Origin: Obrimoposthia wandeli
Lineage: Eukaryota
Direction: 5' to 3'
Length of the DNA: 64,000 nucleotides
Assembly (NCBI GenBank): GCA_977020255.1
Contig: CDROCS010006706.1
Span: 1-64,000, forward strand
Shown here: piece by piece, positions 50,876-62,935 of the stretch
Layout of the letters: every line of letters starts with the position of its first letter
Numbering within the stretch: position 1 is the first letter of the stretch
The notes under the pieces: model-generated
What the model was told of the DNA's origin: nothing
Seen by the model: the letters and a program-made list of their open reading frames with translations, nothing else
Database searches by the model: none
Translations under genes and position numbers: made by a program

Positions 50876-53458
50876 ATGCATCCAGAAAAATTCACAGCTA
50901 AATTACAACAATCAATCGCCGCCGCACAAGCATTGGCGTCCTCCCATAACCATACACAAATAGAACCGTTGCACTTGTTAGCTATATTTATTCAAGAGCA
51001 GGGGAGTAGCATCAATGCGCTGTTATCAAGATTAATAGATTTATCCCAGTTAGAGCAGCAAGTTGTCAGTGCACTGCAGGATTTACCACGCTTACAAAAT
51101 AGCACTGATGATTTACGCTTATCCCAAAACTGTAGCCGCTTGTTTACACACGCTGAAAAACTCGCACAGCAAAGAGGAGATGAATATCTTGCGACAGAAA
51201 TAGTATTGCTCGCGATGCTTGAGGATAAAAGTGGTACGGCTAAATTATTAAAGAAGTCTGAGTTAAACAGTGTAAATTTACAGCGCGAAATAGATGCGCT
51301 TAGAGCAGGTGAAAGTGTGAAAGATAGCAATGCCGAAGAAAACCGTGAATCATTAGAAAAATACTGTATCGATCTAACTGAACTTGCCAAACAGGGAAAA
51401 TTAGACCCTGTGATTGGGCGTGATGATGAAATACGTCGTACTATTCAAGTACTGCAACGACGCACAAAAAATAATCCAGTATTAATAGGTGAGCCAGGTG
51501 TTGGTAAAACGGCGATTGTCGAAGGTTTGGCGCAACGTATTGTTAATTCAGAAGTCCCTGAAGGCTTAAAACACAAACAAGTGCTTTCCCTTGATATGGG
51601 GGCTTTAATCGCCGGAGCTAAGTTTCGTGGGGAGTTTGAAGAACGTCTTAAGTCTGTTTTAAAAGAGCTTTCAAAGGCACAAGGGCAAATTATTTTATTC
51701 ATTGACGAACTACACACTATGGTTGGCGCTGGTGGTGGAGAAGGGGCAATGGATGCTGGTAATATGCTAAAGCCTGCTCTAGCAAGAGGTGATTTACACT
51801 GTGTCGGTGCAACAACTCTAGATGAATATCGCAAACATGTAGAAAAGGATGCAGCATTAGAGCGTCGCTTCCAAAAGGTGTTAGTAGATCAGCCAGATGA
51901 GCAAAGTACTGTTGCCATTTTGCGAGGGCTGAAAGGGCGCTATGAAGTGCATCATGGGGTTGATATTACAGACTCGGCAATCATTGCTGCTGCAAAGCTA
52001 TCCCAGCGTTATATTACAGACAGGCAGCTACCTGATAAAGCGATTGACCTAATTGATGAAGCGGCTTCAGGTATTCGTTTAGAAATGGATTCAAAGCCTG
52101 AAGAATTGGATAAGTTAGAGCGTAAAATTATTCAGCTTAAAATGGAGCGTGAAGCACTTAAAAAAGAGCGCGATAGCGCTGCAAAACAGCGCTTAACATT
52201 ATTGCTTGGTCGCATTAGTGAATTAGAAAAAACCTTTGCTGATTTAGAAGAAGTTTGGGTCGCTGAAAAAGCAGTCTTTCAAAGAGCTCAGCAGATTAAA
52301 GAGCAACTCGATCAGGCGCGCATTGAAATGGAGCAAGCGAGCCGAGCGGGTGACTTAAATAAGATGTCCGAAATTCAATATGGTTTAATTCCAGATTTAG
52401 AAAAGCAGTTAGTGGTTGCCGCTGAAGCCGAGAAAAATGCTGAGCAACACAATAAATTGCTACGCAACAAAGTTGACGAAGAAGAAATTGCCGAGGTTGT
52501 CTCGCGCTGGACAGGTATTCCAGTGCATAAAATGCTTGAAGGTGAGCGTGAGAAATTATTGGCAATGGAAGCAGAGTTGCAAAAAAGTGTAATAGGGCAA
52601 AGCGAAGCAGTTGCTGCTGTCGCGAATGCGGTTAGGCGCTCGAAGGCTGGTTTAGCAGACCCTAATCGCCCTAACGGTAGTTTTCTCTTTTTGGGCCCAA
52701 CGGGAGTTGGTAAAACAGAGCTATGCAAAACATTAGCGCATTATCTATTTGATACCAAAGAAGCAATGGTGCGTATCGATATGTCTGAGTTTATGGAAAA
52801 ACATTCAGTTGCACGATTAATAGGCGCACCGCCGGGTTATGTAGGTTATGAGGAGGGGGGATATTTAACTGAAGCTGTTCGGCGCAAGCCCTATTCAGTG
52901 TTACTGTTAGATGAAGTGGAGAAAGCACACCCTGATGTATTTAATATATTGCTACAAGTGCTTGAAGATGGGCGATTAACTGATGGGCAAGGGCGCACTG
53001 TTGATTTTAGAAATACTATCATAGTGATGACTTCCAACTTAGGTTCGCACCTTATTCAAAACTTTAACACTGCTGATGATTACCAAGTAATGAAAAGTGC
53101 AGTGATGGATGAGGTTTTAAAGCATTTCAGGCCTGAAGTAGTTAATCGCATTGACGAAGTCGTTGTTTTCCAAAGCTTGGATAAAAGTGAAGTGGCGCAA
53201 ATTGCCACTATTCAGTTAGCTAACTTGCAACAACGATTAGCTGAAAAAGAGCTCAGTATGCAGTTTTCCGAAGAGGCGCTACGCAAATTAGTTGATCTAG
53301 GTTACGAGCCTGTATATGGTGCTAGGCCGTTAAAGCGCGCGATACAACAGTGGATTGAAAATCCTCTAGCACAAGCATTGTTGGCAGGTGAGTTCTTACC
53401 TAAATCTAACATACAGGTAGATTTAGAGCAGGGAGAGTTTTGCTTTAAAACACTGTAA
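50876..53458 (+). CDS. clpB: Disaggregase ClpB
   Basis: Two AAA+ modules ([16 protein letters not shown]), middle coiled coil, GARPLKR. Confidence 0.97.
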
Positions 53459-53735: not shown

Positions 53736-54293
53736 ATGCAGTTGGCCAGTGATGAAATTAGTGTTATCGATAACTTAATAGAACAATTGAAAAATTGCTC
53801 AGATGATCCACAACGCATCCAATTGATTGCACAATTAAAAATTAGCCTCAGTGATTTGGGGGCTTATCATTACTTTGGTGACCAAAGCTATGGCCGTAAT
53901 TTGATCTTCAGCAATGACGATTTTGAAGTAATATTAATGTGCTGGAGTCCCGGGCAAGGTACCATTGTGCACGATCATAGTGAATCACTGTGTGTAATGC
54001 AGTGTGTGGTAGGTGAGTTGGATGAACAGCGTTATATTGAGCAATCTAACAAAGAGGAAGCGAAATTTAAAATAAAGCCCTTGCAGATGAGTAAATTAAC
54101 CAGCGGTGAAACTTGTTCAATAACAGATCAAGATGGCCTGCACAGTATTAAGAACAGCTCAACTAGCGCGGCTTGTAGCTTACACTTTTATTTTCCCCCT
54201 ATTCATAACGTCACTTTGTATAACTTGCAAGAAGGTGTGAAAAAGACGGTATCAGGCGTATTTACCAGTGAATATGGTGTTCTAAAGCATTAG
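53736..54293 (+). CDS. Cysteine dioxygenase family protein, Arg-type, eukaryote-like
   Basis: YGRNLI, CWSPGQG, HDHSESLC, GLH, SLHFYFPP, FTSEYG. Confidence 0.88.
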   Translation: MQLASDEISVIDNLIEQLKNCSDDPQRIQLIAQLKISLSDLGAYHYFGDQSYGRNLIFSNDDFEVILMCWSPGQGTIVHDHSESLCVMQCVVGELDEQRYIEQSNKEEAKFKIKPLQMSKLTSGETCSITDQDGLHSIKNSSTSAACSLHFYFPPIHNVTLYNLQEGVKKTVSGVFTSEYGVLKH

Positions 54294-54674: not shown

Positions 54675-55520
54675 GTGCTCTTGTTAAGTTATCAACACAG
54701 CTATCATGCTGGAAATTTTGCCGATGTACACAAACATCTCACGCTATCACTTATTCTTGAATCATTAAATAAGAAAGCCAAGCCTTGGAGTTACTTTGAA
54801 ACGCATGCAGGTATTGCACGCTATGAGCTAAACGGTGAACAAGCGATTAAAACAAATGAGTTTAAGCAGGGTATTGAGCTTATTTATGCGAAGAAGCTGC
54901 CTAGATTTTGTGCTGCATATATCGATGAGATTAAAGCACTTAACATTGGGCAAGACAGCTTGAACTATTATCCCGGCTCTCCTTGGCTAGCGAAATCTGC
55001 ACTTAGAGAAGAGGATAAAATTGCGCTCATGGAGTTACACCCAAGCGAATTTGAAAAACTCAAAGCTGTATTTAACAGAGAACCGAATGTTGCAGTACAT
55101 CACAGAGATGGCTATGAAGGGGTTTTAAGTTTATTACCGCCAAAACCCAACAGAGGCGCTGTATTGATCGACCCGTCATATGAAGTAAAAACGGAATATT
55201 TACAAGTAGTTAAATTCATAGAAAAAGCTTATCAACGTTGGAGTAATGGCTGTTTTGCTATTTGGTATCCACTGTTAAAAGCAGGTAATCACCGAGACAT
55301 GCTGCATAAGCTGAAGCGCTCTGGAATACGTAATATTTTACAAGCTGAGCTATATGTTAAAAGTGAAACTGATGAGCGAATGTATGGTAGCGGCATGTTG
55401 TTAATTAATCCGCCTTGGCAGCTAGATCAACAATTAGGGCAACTTAGTGAAGTATTGTTTCGTCACTTGGCTGATGAAGATGCACAAAAGCCTAAAGTTG
55501 AATGGTTAGTTGCAGAATAA
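54675..55520 (+). CDS. rlmJ: 23S rRNA m6A2030 methyltransferase
   Basis: LSYQHSYHAGNFADVHKH, YPGSP, LIDPSYE, NPPW. Confidence 0.95.
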   Translation: MLLLSYQHSYHAGNFADVHKHLTLSLILESLNKKAKPWSYFETHAGIARYELNGEQAIKTNEFKQGIELIYAKKLPRFCAAYIDEIKALNIGQDSLNYYPGSPWLAKSALREEDKIALMELHPSEFEKLKAVFNREPNVAVHHRDGYEGVLSLLPPKPNRGAVLIDPSYEVKTEYLQVVKFIEKAYQRWSNGCFAIWYPLLKAGNHRDMLHKLKRSGIRNILQAELYVKSETDERMYGSGMLLINPPWQLDQQLGQLSEVLFRHLADEDAQKPKVEWLVAE

Positions 55521-55574
55521 GCGGCTCCAGAAGTAATAGTTGAAGAACCACTAAAAGCAGGTTTAAAAATTGCG

Positions 55575-55602
55575 AAAAAAACGGGCCAATGCCCGTTTTT
55601 TT
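55575..55602. terminator. Bidirectional terminator rlmJ / hypothetical gene
   Basis: AAAAAAACGGGC-caat-GCCCGTTTTTTT. Confidence 0.88.
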
Positions 55603-55629
55603 GTGCCATATTAAATGTAATGCATTTGA

Positions 55630-55896
55630 TTAATACAGTGCGGTAGCATCTTTAGCCATATCAATTAATAAATCTAGAAATAACTTGTCTGCTTCTGAAT
55701 GCTCAACAGGTATTTTTACATTTGTTAATGCTGAAAGCTCATCGGCAATTAATACGCGAGCGTTGTTATCATGAACATGCTTGGCTGCAATTTCCATGGC
55801 AATAACACATATTTCTGGCTCTGAAAAAATCTTGCGAATAACAAGCGTTAGTTCGGTAATAGCACGTTCTTTATTGATTACATCTGCACTTAACAT
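55630..55896 (-). CDS. Small hypothetical protein (88 aa)
   Basis: AGGAG RBS 7 nt before ATG; own terminator; no family recognised. Confidence 0.7.
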   Translation of the reverse strand: MLSADVINKERAITELTLVIRKIFSEPEICVIAMEIAAKHVHDNNARVLIADELSALTNVKIPVEHSEADKLFLDLLIDMAKDATALY

Positions 55897-58671: not shown

Positions 58672-59448
58672 TTACATACGTCCGTAAAAAGTCATTCTAG
58701 CGGATTCAGATAGCGCGACATCAGGCTGAGAGTTATAAGCTAATACAACTAGCATTCTTGTCGTATCTCCCTGGGTAGGCGTAACTCTATGCATGGCGTT
58801 CCTGCCACGAAATAAAGAAAGTGTACCCGCTTGAGCTTGTAGTGTTCTAACAGCTGTTTTGCCTGATAGCACATCTGTAACCCCTGAGTAATTCATTTCG
58901 CCTTTATCGGCATCTCGCAGGTTTTCAACATATTCAAAATCACCTCCTGCTAGCGGTGGTTGAAGCAGTAATGTAATGGCAAAAGATGATTCATCAAAAT
59001 GCCAGCCGAGCTCTTGGCCTTCACTGGCGTAATGCAAATTGATTGAAGATAGTTTGTCAGCATAATTATGTAGTTGTTGCTCACCAAAAATTTTTGCTAA
59101 AAAAGTGCGAAATATCGGCGAATCATAAAGTGTTCTCAAAGGAGAATCTTCAGGTATTTGATCGTCGGTAATACAGCCCTTTGAGGAGTTTACTAATAGA
59201 TTGCGCACGTGATCAACAGAGAAACTAGGATCGCTTTCTTTTAAGTAAACGTTATGGCGGCTGGTGGAATAAAAAGCCAAATGCTGATTATCTATTCCTT
59301 CAGTAACAACTTTCTCAATCGCCTTAGGCGTTAAAAAGTCCTTTAATACTAAAGCACCTGTTGTATCCAATTGCTGTTTGCATTGATCAGTGAATGCACA
59401 GTCATCGATAGGATAACTCTCTAAATGTACAATATTATTAAATTGCAT
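58672..59448 (-). CDS. Fe(II)/2OG oxygenase resembling the BesD/HalD-like family, with HxD (hydroxylase-type) motif
   Basis: ELGWHFD, GGDFEY, AGTLSLFRG..AMHRVTP, RMLVVLAY. Confidence 0.72.
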   Translation of the reverse strand: MQFNNIVHLESYPIDDCAFTDQCKQQLDTTGALVLKDFLTPKAIEKVVTEGIDNQHLAFYSTSRHNVYLKESDPSFSVDHVRNLLVNSSKGCITDDQIPEDSPLRTLYDSPIFRTFLAKIFGEQQLHNYADKLSSINLHYASEGQELGWHFDESSFAITLLLQPPLAGGDFEYVENLRDADKGEMNYSGVTDVLSGKTAVRTLQAQAGTLSLFRGRNAMHRVTPTQGDTTRMLVVLAYNSQPDVALSESARMTFYGRM

Positions 59449-61930: not shown

Positions 61931-62935
61931 ATGTTAATACTAGAACAACAGAAAATTAAATCGTCTGAAATTACCTCTGAGTCAATTTATCAGCAGCGTA
62001 GAAGTTTTATGAAAGCAGCTCTAGGCGTGACATCAGCCGTCGCTTCTTCAAGCGTACTTGCTTTGACAAACTATGAGTTAGAAGATGAAAAGCGTTATCC
62101 AGGCCCTAAGTGGTTGCAACAGAAAACACAAGATTCTGTTAAACATCCAAGTTTTCAAGCAAAAGATAAACTGACTCCTTATGGAGATGTAACTACTTAT
62201 AATAATTTCTATGAATTTGGTACTAGTAAAGATGAACCAGCAAAGCGTGCTCAAAAATTTGTAACTGACCCTTGGATGGTTGAAGTTTCAGGTGAAGTGG
62301 CCAAGCCTGGGAATTATCATTTAGAAGATTTTGTAAAGCCTCATACATTAGAAGAGCGTATTTGTCGTTTACGTTGTGTTGAAGGTTGGTCAATGGTTAT
62401 TCCTTGGATGGGAGTTTCGCTAGCCGAGGTAATAAAGCGCTTTGAACCAACCAGTAAAGCAAAATATATTGAGTTCACAACGTTACATGACCCAGAGCAA
62501 ATGCCAGAGCAAAGCGCCACATTTGGCACGCTAGACTGGCCGTATGTTGAAGGATTGAGATTAGATGAAGCAATGAATCCGCTCGCATTTTTGGCGACAG
62601 GTTTATATGGACAGGGATTACCACCACAAAACGGAGCGCCGTTGCGCTTAGTTGTTCCTTGGAAATATGGTTTTAAAAATATTAAATCGATTGTCAAAAT
62701 CCGTTTTACTGAAACAATGCCAAGAAATACGTGGTACGAGACAAACCCGAGAGAGTACGGTTTTTACGCCAACGTAAACCCAGCTGTTGATCATCCTCGT
62801 TGGAGCCAAGCAACTGAAAGACGCCTACCTAGTGGGCTTTTCTCACCTAATAGAATTGAAACGCTGCCTTTTAATGGATATGCAGAAGAAGTTGCGCATC
62901 TTTATAAGGGTATGGATTTAGCTAAATGGTACTAA
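61931..62935 (+). CDS. msrP: Methionine sulfoxide reductase catalytic subunit (molybdoenzyme)
   Basis: Tat motif [42 protein letters not shown]. Confidence 0.96.

What the first reader, a model, noticed from the sequence alone, without database searches (positions are those of the whole stretch)
53736..54293. Bacterial cysteine dioxygenase retaining the eukaryotic Cys-Tyr crosslink pair
Seen: the protein has Y52-G-R54, H79-D-H81-S-E-S-L-C86, H136, S148-L-H150-F-Y152 and a C-terminal FTSEYG. Known: mammalian CDO has Y58/R60, H86/H88/H140, C93 and S153-H155-Y157; C93 and Y157 form a thioether cofactor, and characterised bacterial CDOs and thiol dioxygenases usually have Gly at the C93 position. 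Here C86 lies exactly 7 residues after the first His, as C93 does, and the tail mirrors rat FHSKFG. Inference: this bacterial Arg-type CDO may form the crosslink, from either an under-studied bacterial clade or eukaryote-bacterium transfer.
Basis: partly seen in the sequence, partly recalled or inferred. Interest (0 to 1): 0.72.

Follow-up and report, generated by a model that had tools for sequence, protein, structure and literature searches.

The report
Mammalian-like cysteine dioxygenase in marine bacterium
This is an intact, well-conserved gene for a cysteine-oxidising iron enzyme in a marine Oceanospirillaceae/Nitrincolaceae bacterium that keeps the cysteine and tyrosine which fuse into a built-in cofactor in the animal enzyme; such bacterial versions turn out to be widespread and already noted in the literature, so it is a good test case, not a surprise.

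Summary
It is a clear Pfam CDO_I member (E 3e-24). Its best solved relatives are mammalian CDO1, with C86 aligned to C93 and Y152 to Y157. A confident AlphaFold model (pLDDT 94.8) superposes on rat and human CDO at Z about 25.5 and 1.7-1.9 A over about 175 residues.

The gene lies between clpB and rlmJ in 11 species-level Nitrincolaceae/Oceanospirillaceae genomes. It is under purifying selection (dN/dS 0.08). C86 and Y152 are invariant in all 32 family sequences.

It is most likely an Arg-type L-cysteine dioxygenase that forms the Cys-Tyr thioether during turnover.

The implied rarity does not hold. The same Cys occurs in named Paenibacillus, Flavobacteriia, Stenotrophomonas and Vibrio homologues, and in 56 of 74 putatively bacterial relatives sampled. 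The literature has flagged Cys-bearing bacterial CDOs (Schultz 2023, as cited) and tested them genetically in Bordetella pertussis (Saha 2026).

Trees place this bacterial group next to eukaryotic CDOs. They cannot resolve whether, or in which direction, a transfer occurred. A recent transfer is unlikely.

Verdict: a new member of a known kind, of moderate interest.

The parts
53736..54293 (+). Cysteine dioxygenase gene (185 aa plus stop), Arg-type, Cys-Tyr-bearing
   Evidence: ORF. Pfam CDO_I E 3e-24. Mammalian CDO1 are the best PDB sequence matches, E 4e-19. AlphaFold pLDDT 94.8. VIA Z 25.4-25.9 to rat and human CDO. dN/dS 0.083 against L001.
53889..53897 (+). Codons Y52-G53-R54: predicted substrate-carboxylate clamp, equivalent to rat Y58/R60
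   Evidence: Y52 and R54 are invariant in 115 aligned homologues. They align to rat Y58/R60. The Arg marks the Arg-type, L-Cys-specific branch.
53970..53978 (+). Codons H79-D80-H81: two of the three Fe(II)-binding histidines, equivalent to rat H86/H88
   Evidence: H79 is invariant and H81 is present in 113 of 115 sequences.
53991..53993 (+). Codon C86: predicted thioether partner, equivalent to rat C93
   Evidence: Seven residues after H79. Aligned to C93 without gaps. Invariant in all 32 family sequences.
54141..54143 (+). Codon H136: third Fe(II) ligand, equivalent to rat H140
   Evidence: Invariant in 115 of 115 sequences.
54177..54191 (+). Codons S148-L-H150-F-Y152: Ser-His-Tyr network, with Y152 the predicted crosslink partner (rat S153/H155/Y157)
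   Evidence: H150 is invariant and Y152 is present in 114 of 115 sequences.
54261..54278 (+). Codons F176-T-S-E-Y-G181: C-terminal strand motif shared with animal CDO (FHSKFG)
   Evidence: Aligned. The motif F.[ST]..G is found in 12 of 12 family members, its three nearest bacterial relatives and 32 of 50 rows of the eukaryote-like cluster, but only 1 further Cys-type row among the other putative bacteria. B. subtilis CDO stops aligning at model residue 165.
50876..53458 (+). Context: clpB, the conserved upstream neighbour
   Evidence: 79-96% identical and adjacent to the CDO gene in L001-L011.
54675..55520 (+). Context: rlmJ (23S rRNA methyltransferase), the conserved downstream neighbour
   Evidence: Pfam RsmJ/RlmJ E 2.7e-71. 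Found downstream of the CDO gene in 9 of the 11 family loci.

Best explanation
The gene encodes a functional, cytoplasmic, mononuclear non-haem Fe(II) cysteine dioxygenase of the Arg type. H79, H81 and H136 hold the iron. L-cysteine binds through its thiolate and amine, with its carboxylate clamped by R54 and Y52. O2 is added to the sulphur to give cysteine sulfinic acid, assisted by the S148-H150-Y152 network. These steps are inferred from conserved residues and from the fold. C86 occupies the position of mammalian C93 next to Y152. The enzyme is therefore expected to form the Cys-Tyr thioether autocatalytically during turnover, as the mammalian enzyme does, which would raise its efficiency when cysteine is abundant. 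This step is inferred and not shown. Physiologically it would remove or catabolise excess cysteine in a marine heterotroph, giving cysteine sulfinate and then pyruvate plus sulfite, or hypotaurine. Downstream enzymes were not identified in the window. The gene is an old, vertically inherited resident of the Nitrincolaceae/Oceanospirillaceae chromosome, not a recent import.
For: The ORF is intact and every catalytic residue is present. Pfam CDO_I scores 85.9 bits against a 23-bit cut-off. Mammalian CDO1 are the best PDB matches (E 4e-19 to 1e-18), ahead of B. subtilis CDO (5e-12) and of 3MDO and ergothioneine dioxygenase (1e-3 or worse), with gap-free alignment at both motifs. The AlphaFold model has pLDDT 94.8. 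Foldseek gives TM 0.85-0.86. VIA gives Z 25.4-25.9 and rmsd 1.7-1.9 A over 174-175 residues, spanning model 8-185 against CDO 9-190. R54, H79, H81, C86, H136, H150 and Y152 are invariant in 32 family sequences at a mean column identity of 47%. dN/dS is 0.083. The clpB-cdo-rlmJ order is conserved in the family's species genomes. Gene GC is 39% against 40% for the window. Placing a Cys at this position in Gly-type bacterial enzymes is enough for crosslinking: PDB 4WVZ is titled 'artificial crosslinked ... G95C', and the title of Schultz et al. 2023 says the same for B. subtilis. C-to-G replacement in both B. pertussis CDOs impairs growth in excess cysteine (PMC13689094).
Against: There is no biochemical evidence for activity, substrate or crosslink in this protein or in any member of its clade. 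Proximity is inferred from the superposition and from gap-free motif spacing. No RNA run was found, so expression is not shown. The neighbours are housekeeping genes, with no functionally linked sulfite exporter, aminotransferase or decarboxylase. No promoter signal above chance was found. According to Saha et al., putting Cys into the B. subtilis and P. aeruginosa enzymes did not improve activity, so a crosslink need not be beneficial in every scaffold.
Confidence: 0.72

Rival explanations
1. It is an active cysteine dioxygenase, but C86 is conserved for another reason, such as packing, tuning of pH optimum or stability, or redox sensing. In that case it does not form a thioether with Y152 in vivo.
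For: The crosslink has not been shown for any natural bacterial CDO. Saha et al. say explicitly that they have no direct biochemical evidence. The Cys/non-Cys state changed at least 8 times on a tree of 136 homologues, so the residue is not essential to the fold or the chemistry. Engineered Cys did not raise activity in the B. subtilis or P. aeruginosa enzymes.
Against: C86 and Y152 are both invariant across the family despite about 50% overall divergence. Geometry is inferred to match mammalian CDO. Crosslinks form even in engineered Gly-to-Cys bacterial enzymes (4WVZ title; Schultz title).
Confidence: 0.15
2. It is a thiol dioxygenase whose physiological substrate is not free L-cysteine, for example D-cysteine, homocysteine, cysteamine, a Cys-containing peptide or another marine organosulfur thiol.
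For: The CDO fold hosts 3-mercaptopropionate, mercaptosuccinate and ergothioneine dioxygenases. The closest relatives outside the family, in Paenibacillus ihumii and in P0060 contigs, sit in a conserved cluster with two ATP-grasp ligases, an MFS transporter and an aminotransferase. That hints at a specialised pathway role for at least some relatives.
Against: The Y52-x-R54 carboxylate clamp and every other mammalian active-site marker are kept. Similarity to mammalian CDO (E 1e-18) far exceeds that to the other substrate classes (1e-3 or worse). The gene here stands alone, outside any biosynthetic cluster.
Confidence: 0.1
3. The gene was recently acquired from a eukaryote, for example an animal host of Osedax-symbiont-like bacteria, and is a eukaryotic gene living in a bacterium.
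For: The best solved and profile matches are animal CDO1. The full-length architecture, including the C-terminal FxSxxG strand, is shared with eukaryotes. The bacterial group containing it is adjacent to the eukaryotic sequences in the tree (92/89). A clade of this group plus metazoa is not rejected (AU p 0.53). Some relatives are Osedax symbionts.
Against: Identity to animal CDO is only about 25-35%. The nearest relatives are all bacterial (Pseudomonadales MAG, Paenibacillus, P0101), with support of 95-98. The same chromosomal slot is occupied in 11 species whose CDOs have diverged to 47-55% identity, which implies long vertical descent. Base composition is native. No viral copies were found.
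Confidence: 0.03

Closest known systems
Mammalian cysteine dioxygenase type 1 (rat, mouse and human CDO1; e.g. PDB 2B5H, 2ATF, 2IC1, 6BGM)
   Same: Both have the 3-His iron site, the Tyr-x-Arg substrate clamp, the Ser-His-Tyr network, a Cys seven residues after the first His, the Tyr partner and the C-terminal FxSxxG strand. The full-length fold matches at Z about 25.5 and rmsd 1.7-1.9 A.
   Different: Sequence identity is only about 25% in the structural alignments (up to about 34% to an arthropod CDO representative). The protein is 185 aa against 200 aa. It is encoded in a bacterial chromosome between clpB and rlmJ. Crosslink and activity are untested. Rat C164 is not conserved.
Bordetella pertussis CDO homologues BP2871 and BP3011 (Saha et al. 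2026, PMC13689094)
   Same: They are bacterial CDO homologues that carry a Cys at the C93-equivalent position. Its importance is supported genetically: C-to-G mutants are sensitive to excess cysteine. The crosslink is proposed but not shown biochemically.
   Different: They belong to a host-restricted betaproteobacterial pathogen and are reported as closest to Burkholderia and Cupriavidus enzymes. They did not appear among this protein's nearest relatives. The present enzyme comes from free-living or symbiotic marine gammaproteobacteria, which does not fit a pathogen-specific acquisition story.
Bacillus subtilis CDO (YubC; PDB 3EQE, 4QM8/4QM9) and other characterised Gly-type bacterial CDOs
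   Same: These are also Arg-type bacterial L-Cys dioxygenases with the same metal site and Ser/Thr-His-Tyr network.
   Different: The Bacillus-type enzymes have Gly where this protein has C86 (checked here in B. cereus and P. megaterium). They are about 155-160 aa and lack the C-terminal strands, with alignment ending at model residue 165. The match is weaker, E 5e-12 and Z 20.
Gln-type 3-mercaptopropionate dioxygenases (P. aeruginosa, A. vinelandii; PDB 4TLF, 6XB9) and the engineered G95C crosslinked variant 4WVZ
   Same: They share the fold (Z about 21). 4WVZ shows that a Cys at this position crosslinks to the Tyr in a bacterial scaffold.
   Different: They carry Gln instead of Arg at the R54 position and use a different substrate. 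Sequence similarity is marginal (E 4e-3 to 0.08).

Membership tests
Cysteine dioxygenase type I family (Pfam PF05995) | Profile score above the curated gathering threshold | tested here: met
   85.9 bits against a 23-bit cut-off, E 3e-24, covering profile positions 29-168 of 170.
Cysteine dioxygenase type I family (Pfam PF05995) | Cupin fold matching solved CDO structures | tested here: met
   The AlphaFold model has pLDDT 94.8. Foldseek TM is 0.85-0.86. VIA Z is 25.4-25.9 with rmsd 1.7-1.9 A over 174-175 residues.
Cysteine dioxygenase type I family (Pfam PF05995) | Three-histidine Fe(II) site (rat H86, H88, H140) | tested here: met
   H79, H81 and H136 are present and aligned. They are invariant or nearly so in 115 homologues.
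Arg-type (L-cysteine-specific) CDO | Arg at the rat R60 position with Tyr at Y58, and not Gln as in 3MDO | tested here: met
   Y52-G-R54 is present, and Y52 and R54 are invariant in 115 of 115 sequences.
Arg-type (L-cysteine-specific) CDO | Ser-His-Tyr outer-sphere network (rat S153/H155/Y157) | tested here: met
   S148, H150 and Y152 are present.
Arg-type (L-cysteine-specific) CDO | O2-dependent conversion of L-cysteine to cysteine sulfinic acid | not testable with these tools
   This needs an enzyme assay.
Cys-Tyr crosslinked ('eukaryote-type') CDO | Cys at the C93 position and Tyr at the Y157 position | tested here: met
   C86 aligns to C93 and Y152 to Y157 without gaps. Both are invariant in the 32-sequence family alignment.
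Cys-Tyr crosslinked ('eukaryote-type') CDO | Cys sulphur within bonding distance of the Tyr ring carbon | tested here: inconclusive
   Model coordinates are not exposed to scripts, so no distance was measured. Proximity is inferred from the 1.7-1.9 A full-length superposition on crosslinked human CDO (6BGM, 6E87) and from identical motif spacing.
Cys-Tyr crosslinked ('eukaryote-type') CDO | Thioether bond actually formed | not testable with these tools
   This needs an SDS-PAGE doublet, LC-MS/MS or a crystal structure.
Gln-type 3-mercaptopropionate dioxygenase | Gln at the rat R60 position | tested here: not met
   The residue is Arg (R54). PDB 3MDO matches reach only E 4e-3 to 0.08.

The most novel reading that the evidence does not exclude
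The Nitrincolaceae / Pseudomonadales-MAG / Paenibacillus-type group may be the bacterial lineage closest to the stem of eukaryotic CDOs. It shares the Cys-Tyr pair and the C-terminal FxSxxG strand with them. If so, the Cys-Tyr cofactor is a bacterial invention, or at least an ancient shared one, and Cys would be the common state in bacterial Arg-type CDOs. The well-studied Gly-type Bacillus enzymes would then be the derived exception. On this reading the marine enzymes would form a native crosslink and give the first natural bacterial example.
Probability: 0.3. Interest if true: 0.5.

Novelty: new member of a known kind. Interest (0 to 1): 0.36.

Why it matters
The Cys-Tyr cofactor of CDO is a textbook protein-derived cofactor that is usually described as a mammalian or eukaryotic speciality. 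In the papers I could read, no natural bacterial CDO has been shown biochemically to form it. This family offers small, soluble, highly conserved candidates from non-pathogenic marine heterotrophs.

Showing a native crosslink here would move the cofactor's origin outside eukaryotes. It would also weaken the idea that Cys-bearing bacterial CDOs are host-derived adaptations of pathogens. The enzyme would further indicate an O2-dependent route for cysteine removal in bloom-associated and bone-degrading marine bacteria.

The conceptual advance is limited, however, because the existence of Cys-bearing bacterial CDOs has already been published.

Tried and rejected
1. Key papers could not be read, so their content is known only through citations and titles. 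These are Driggers 2015 (PMC4282421), Dominy 2006 (PMC1540046), Stipanuk 2011 (PMC3136866) and Schultz 2023 (PMC10697556).

3. No RNA run holds the locus, and read laying was therefore not used.

4. Promoter and terminator scans gave nothing above shuffles. Rfam gave only sub-threshold sRNA hits in the next intergenic region. No regulatory element can be claimed.

5. NCBIfam has no model that matches the protein.

6. A viral-contig scan found no relatives.

7. The scan's earlier findings hold nothing near this locus or on this topic.

8. The plasmid tblastn search returned only 13 distant hits. They were useful only as named Gly-type (Bacillus, Priestia) and Cys-type (Vibrio) controls.

9. A metazoan-origin hypothesis was tested by AU test and could be neither rejected nor supported (p 0.53).

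10. An unbiased census of Cys against Gly across all bacterial PF05995 proteins was not possible. The full HMMER search lists only the best 150 of 3056 hits, and the genome scan used patterns taken from the Cys-type family. The 76% Cys figure is therefore biased toward relatives of a Cys-type query.

Full report
**1. The observation**

window:53736-54293(+) is a single ATG-initiated ORF of 185 codons plus stop.
- Y52-G53-R54
- H79-D-H81-S-E-S-L-C86
- H136
- S148-L-H150-F-Y152
- the C-terminal F176-T-S-E-Y-G181

The spacing from H79 to C86 is 7 residues, as for H86 to C93 in rat CDO. Gene GC is 39% against 40% for the window, so there is no compositional anomaly.

**2. Family assignment**

- Pfam CDO_I matches at 85.9 bits against a 23-bit cut-off, E 3e-24. 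NCBIfam has no model for the protein.
- Against all PDB sequences the best matches are mammalian CDO1, at E 4e-19 to 1e-18. The alignments run without gaps through both motifs and into the C-terminal FxSxxG strand.
- B. subtilis CDO scores only 5e-12. Ergothioneine dioxygenase and the 3-mercaptopropionate dioxygenases score 1e-3 or worse.
- An AlphaFold model built on a 115-sequence alignment is confident, with pLDDT 94.8 and pTM 0.89.
- Foldseek ranks rat, mouse and human CDO first, at TM 0.85-0.86.
- VIA-align gives Z 25.4-25.9 and rmsd 1.7-1.9 A over 174-175 residues, with model 8-185 matching CDO 9-190. The matches include crosslinked human CDO entries.
- B. subtilis CDO gives Z 20 and stops aligning at model residue 165, so it lacks the C-terminal strands that this protein shares with animal CDO.
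- I could not reach the model coordinates. The proximity of C86 and Y152 is therefore inferred, not measured.

**3. Who has it**

The word-indexed search found 31 relatives at 44-90% identity. All named ones are marine Oceanospirillaceae, Pseudomonadales MAGs or Osedax symbionts. In their alignment R54, H79, H81, C86, H136, H150 and Y152 are invariant, at a mean column identity of 47%.

The scan of GTDB species genomes returned 11 family genomes. Their titles name Nitrincola, 'DT-Nitrincolaceae' MAGs, Osedax symbionts Rs2 and Oceanospirillaceae MAGs.

In these genomes the gene lies directly downstream of clpB. It is followed by rlmJ in 9 of the 11 loci and by ilvI in 8 of them, and ilvH follows ilvI in 7 of those 8. 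Flanking proteins are mostly 70-98% identical to those of the window. The CDOs have diverged to 47-55% identity, or 90% in the closest genome, L001.

Against L001 the gene shows dN/dS of 0.083, compared with 0.034 for clpB. It is therefore an old, vertically inherited gene under selection, not a recent import. No viral copy was found. No RNA-seq run holds the locus, so expression is not shown.

**4. How unusual the Cys is**

It is less unusual than the finding implies.

- Named bacterial homologues with Cys and Tyr at these positions are Paenibacillus ihumii, Flavobacteriaceae, Fluviicola, Flavobacterium, Psychroserpens, Stenotrophomonas and Vibrio sp. THAF191d.
- Three unnamed Cys-type representatives, P0060, P0081 and P0101, lie in plainly bacterial gene neighbourhoods.
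- Gly occurs in B. cereus, P. megaterium and an Acidobacteriota MAG.
- The exhaustive HMMER search gave 3056 hits at E up to 1e-3. Among the 83 single-domain representatives outside the family in the top 150, 66 have Cys and 13 have Gly.
- Among the 74 tree rows that fall outside both the eukaryote-like cluster and the family, 56 have Cys.
- This sample is biased toward relatives of a Cys-type query. It still shows many diverse bacterial Cys-type lineages.
- The state changed at least 8 times on the 136-row tree.

**5. Literature**

Saha et al. 2026 (PMC13689094) make the following points:
- Most bacterial CDOs have Gly at this position.
- Both B. pertussis CDO homologues have the Cys.
- C-to-G replacement makes the bacterium sensitive to excess cysteine.
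- The authors have no direct biochemical proof of a crosslink.
- A 'recent bioinformatic analysis' found Cys-type CDOs in several Gram-negative pathogens, possibly acquired from eukaryotic hosts. This is their reference 19, Schultz et al. 2023, Biochemistry 62:1964.

That paper's title, and PDB 4WVZ ('artificial crosslinked thiol dioxygenase G95C variant'), show that a Cys introduced at this position in bacterial scaffolds does crosslink. I found no paper that connects CDO with Nitrincolaceae or Osedax symbionts. Several primary papers were not held.

**6. Phylogeny**

In a careful IQ-TREE analysis of 46 labelled sequences, support values are ultrafast bootstrap / SH-aLRT:

| Grouping | Support |
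|---|---|
| The family of 12 sequences | 100/99 |
| Family plus a Pseudomonadales MAG | 98/89 |
| Those plus Paenibacillus ihumii and P0060 | 97/86 |
| Those plus P0101 | 95/89 |
| This 16-row bacterial group together with the 18 eukaryotic sequences | 92/89 |
| Eukaryotes as one group | 48/37 |

The 92/89 grouping sets the 16 bacterial and 18 eukaryotic sequences apart from the Flavobacteriia, Stenotrophomonas, Vibrio, Acidobacteriota and Bacillus types.

An AU test does not reject a clade of the bacterial group plus metazoa, at p 0.53. The tree is unrooted. The C-terminal FxSxxG motif is shared by the family, its nearest bacterial relatives and most rows of the eukaryote-like cluster, but by few other bacteria.

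This is therefore the most eukaryote-like bacterial CDO group in my sample. Whether a transfer occurred, and in which direction, cannot be decided here. A recent host-to-bacterium transfer is very unlikely.

**7. Mechanism (inferred)**

- Fe(II) is bound by H79, H81 and H136.
- L-Cys binds through its thiolate and amine, with its carboxylate held by R54 and Y52.
- O2 activation yields cysteine sulfinate, assisted by S148-H150-Y152.
- During turnover C86 and Y152 form the thioether, as in mammalian CDO, which raises efficiency at high cysteine.

The likely role is disposal or catabolism of cysteine in copiotrophic marine heterotrophs. The neighbours are housekeeping genes, so context gives no pathway clue. 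Promoter, terminator and Rfam scans gave nothing usable.

**8. Verdict**

This is a new, uncharacterised member of an already recognised kind, the bacterial CDOs that carry the C93-equivalent Cys. It is a good candidate for the first biochemical demonstration of a native bacterial Cys-Tyr cofactor. Interest is moderate. The scan's earlier findings held nothing bearing on this locus.

Noticed in passing
Proteins P0032-P0080 (e.g. P0032, Diphylleia rotans transcript, 814 aa): The top hits of the exhaustive search are 600-920-aa eukaryotic proteins made of 3-4 tandem CDO domains. The one looked up (P0032) is a Diphylleia rotans protist transcript; the others carry no name. Most domains keep the full 3-His / Arg / Ser-His-Tyr set. 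In the typical four-domain proteins the second domain always has the Cys, while the other domains often have Ser, Ala, Val or Gly at that position. I know of no description of such multi-CDO polyproteins.
   Followed up: partly
L012:3277-10523 (Paenibacillus ihumii) and L025/L026:3229-10560: The closest relatives outside the family sit in a conserved six-gene cluster: two ATP-grasp L-amino-acid-ligase-like genes, the CDO, a 425-aa protein with no Pfam hit, an MFS transporter and an aminotransferase. The cluster proteins are 60-77% identical between the two sources. This looks like a small biosynthetic pathway that uses an oxidised cysteine building block.
   Followed up: partly
window:48861-49523 (+), 58672-59448 (-), 61931-62935 (+): Three further oxidoreductase genes lie in the conserved neighbourhood. 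One is a 2OG-Fe_Oxy_2 dioxygenase. One is a HalD/WelO5-like 2OG oxygenase next to a LysR regulator. One is a molybdopterin oxidoreductase of the sulfite-oxidase/MsrP family. None is adjacent to the CDO gene, and no functional link was established.
   Followed up: no
window:55630-55896 (-): An 88-aa ORF lies between rlmJ and ilvI with no Pfam or NCBIfam match. Weak sub-threshold Rfam sRNA hits fall in the adjoining intergenic region at 55532-55657.
   Followed up: no
scan index for 'this genome': Earlier notes filed under the same 'genome' describe a Photobacterium operon and a eukaryotic gypsy retroelement. The source therefore appears to be a mixed metagenome assembly and not one organism. 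One sequencing run that shares a small part of the locus is labelled an ice metagenome.
   Followed up: no
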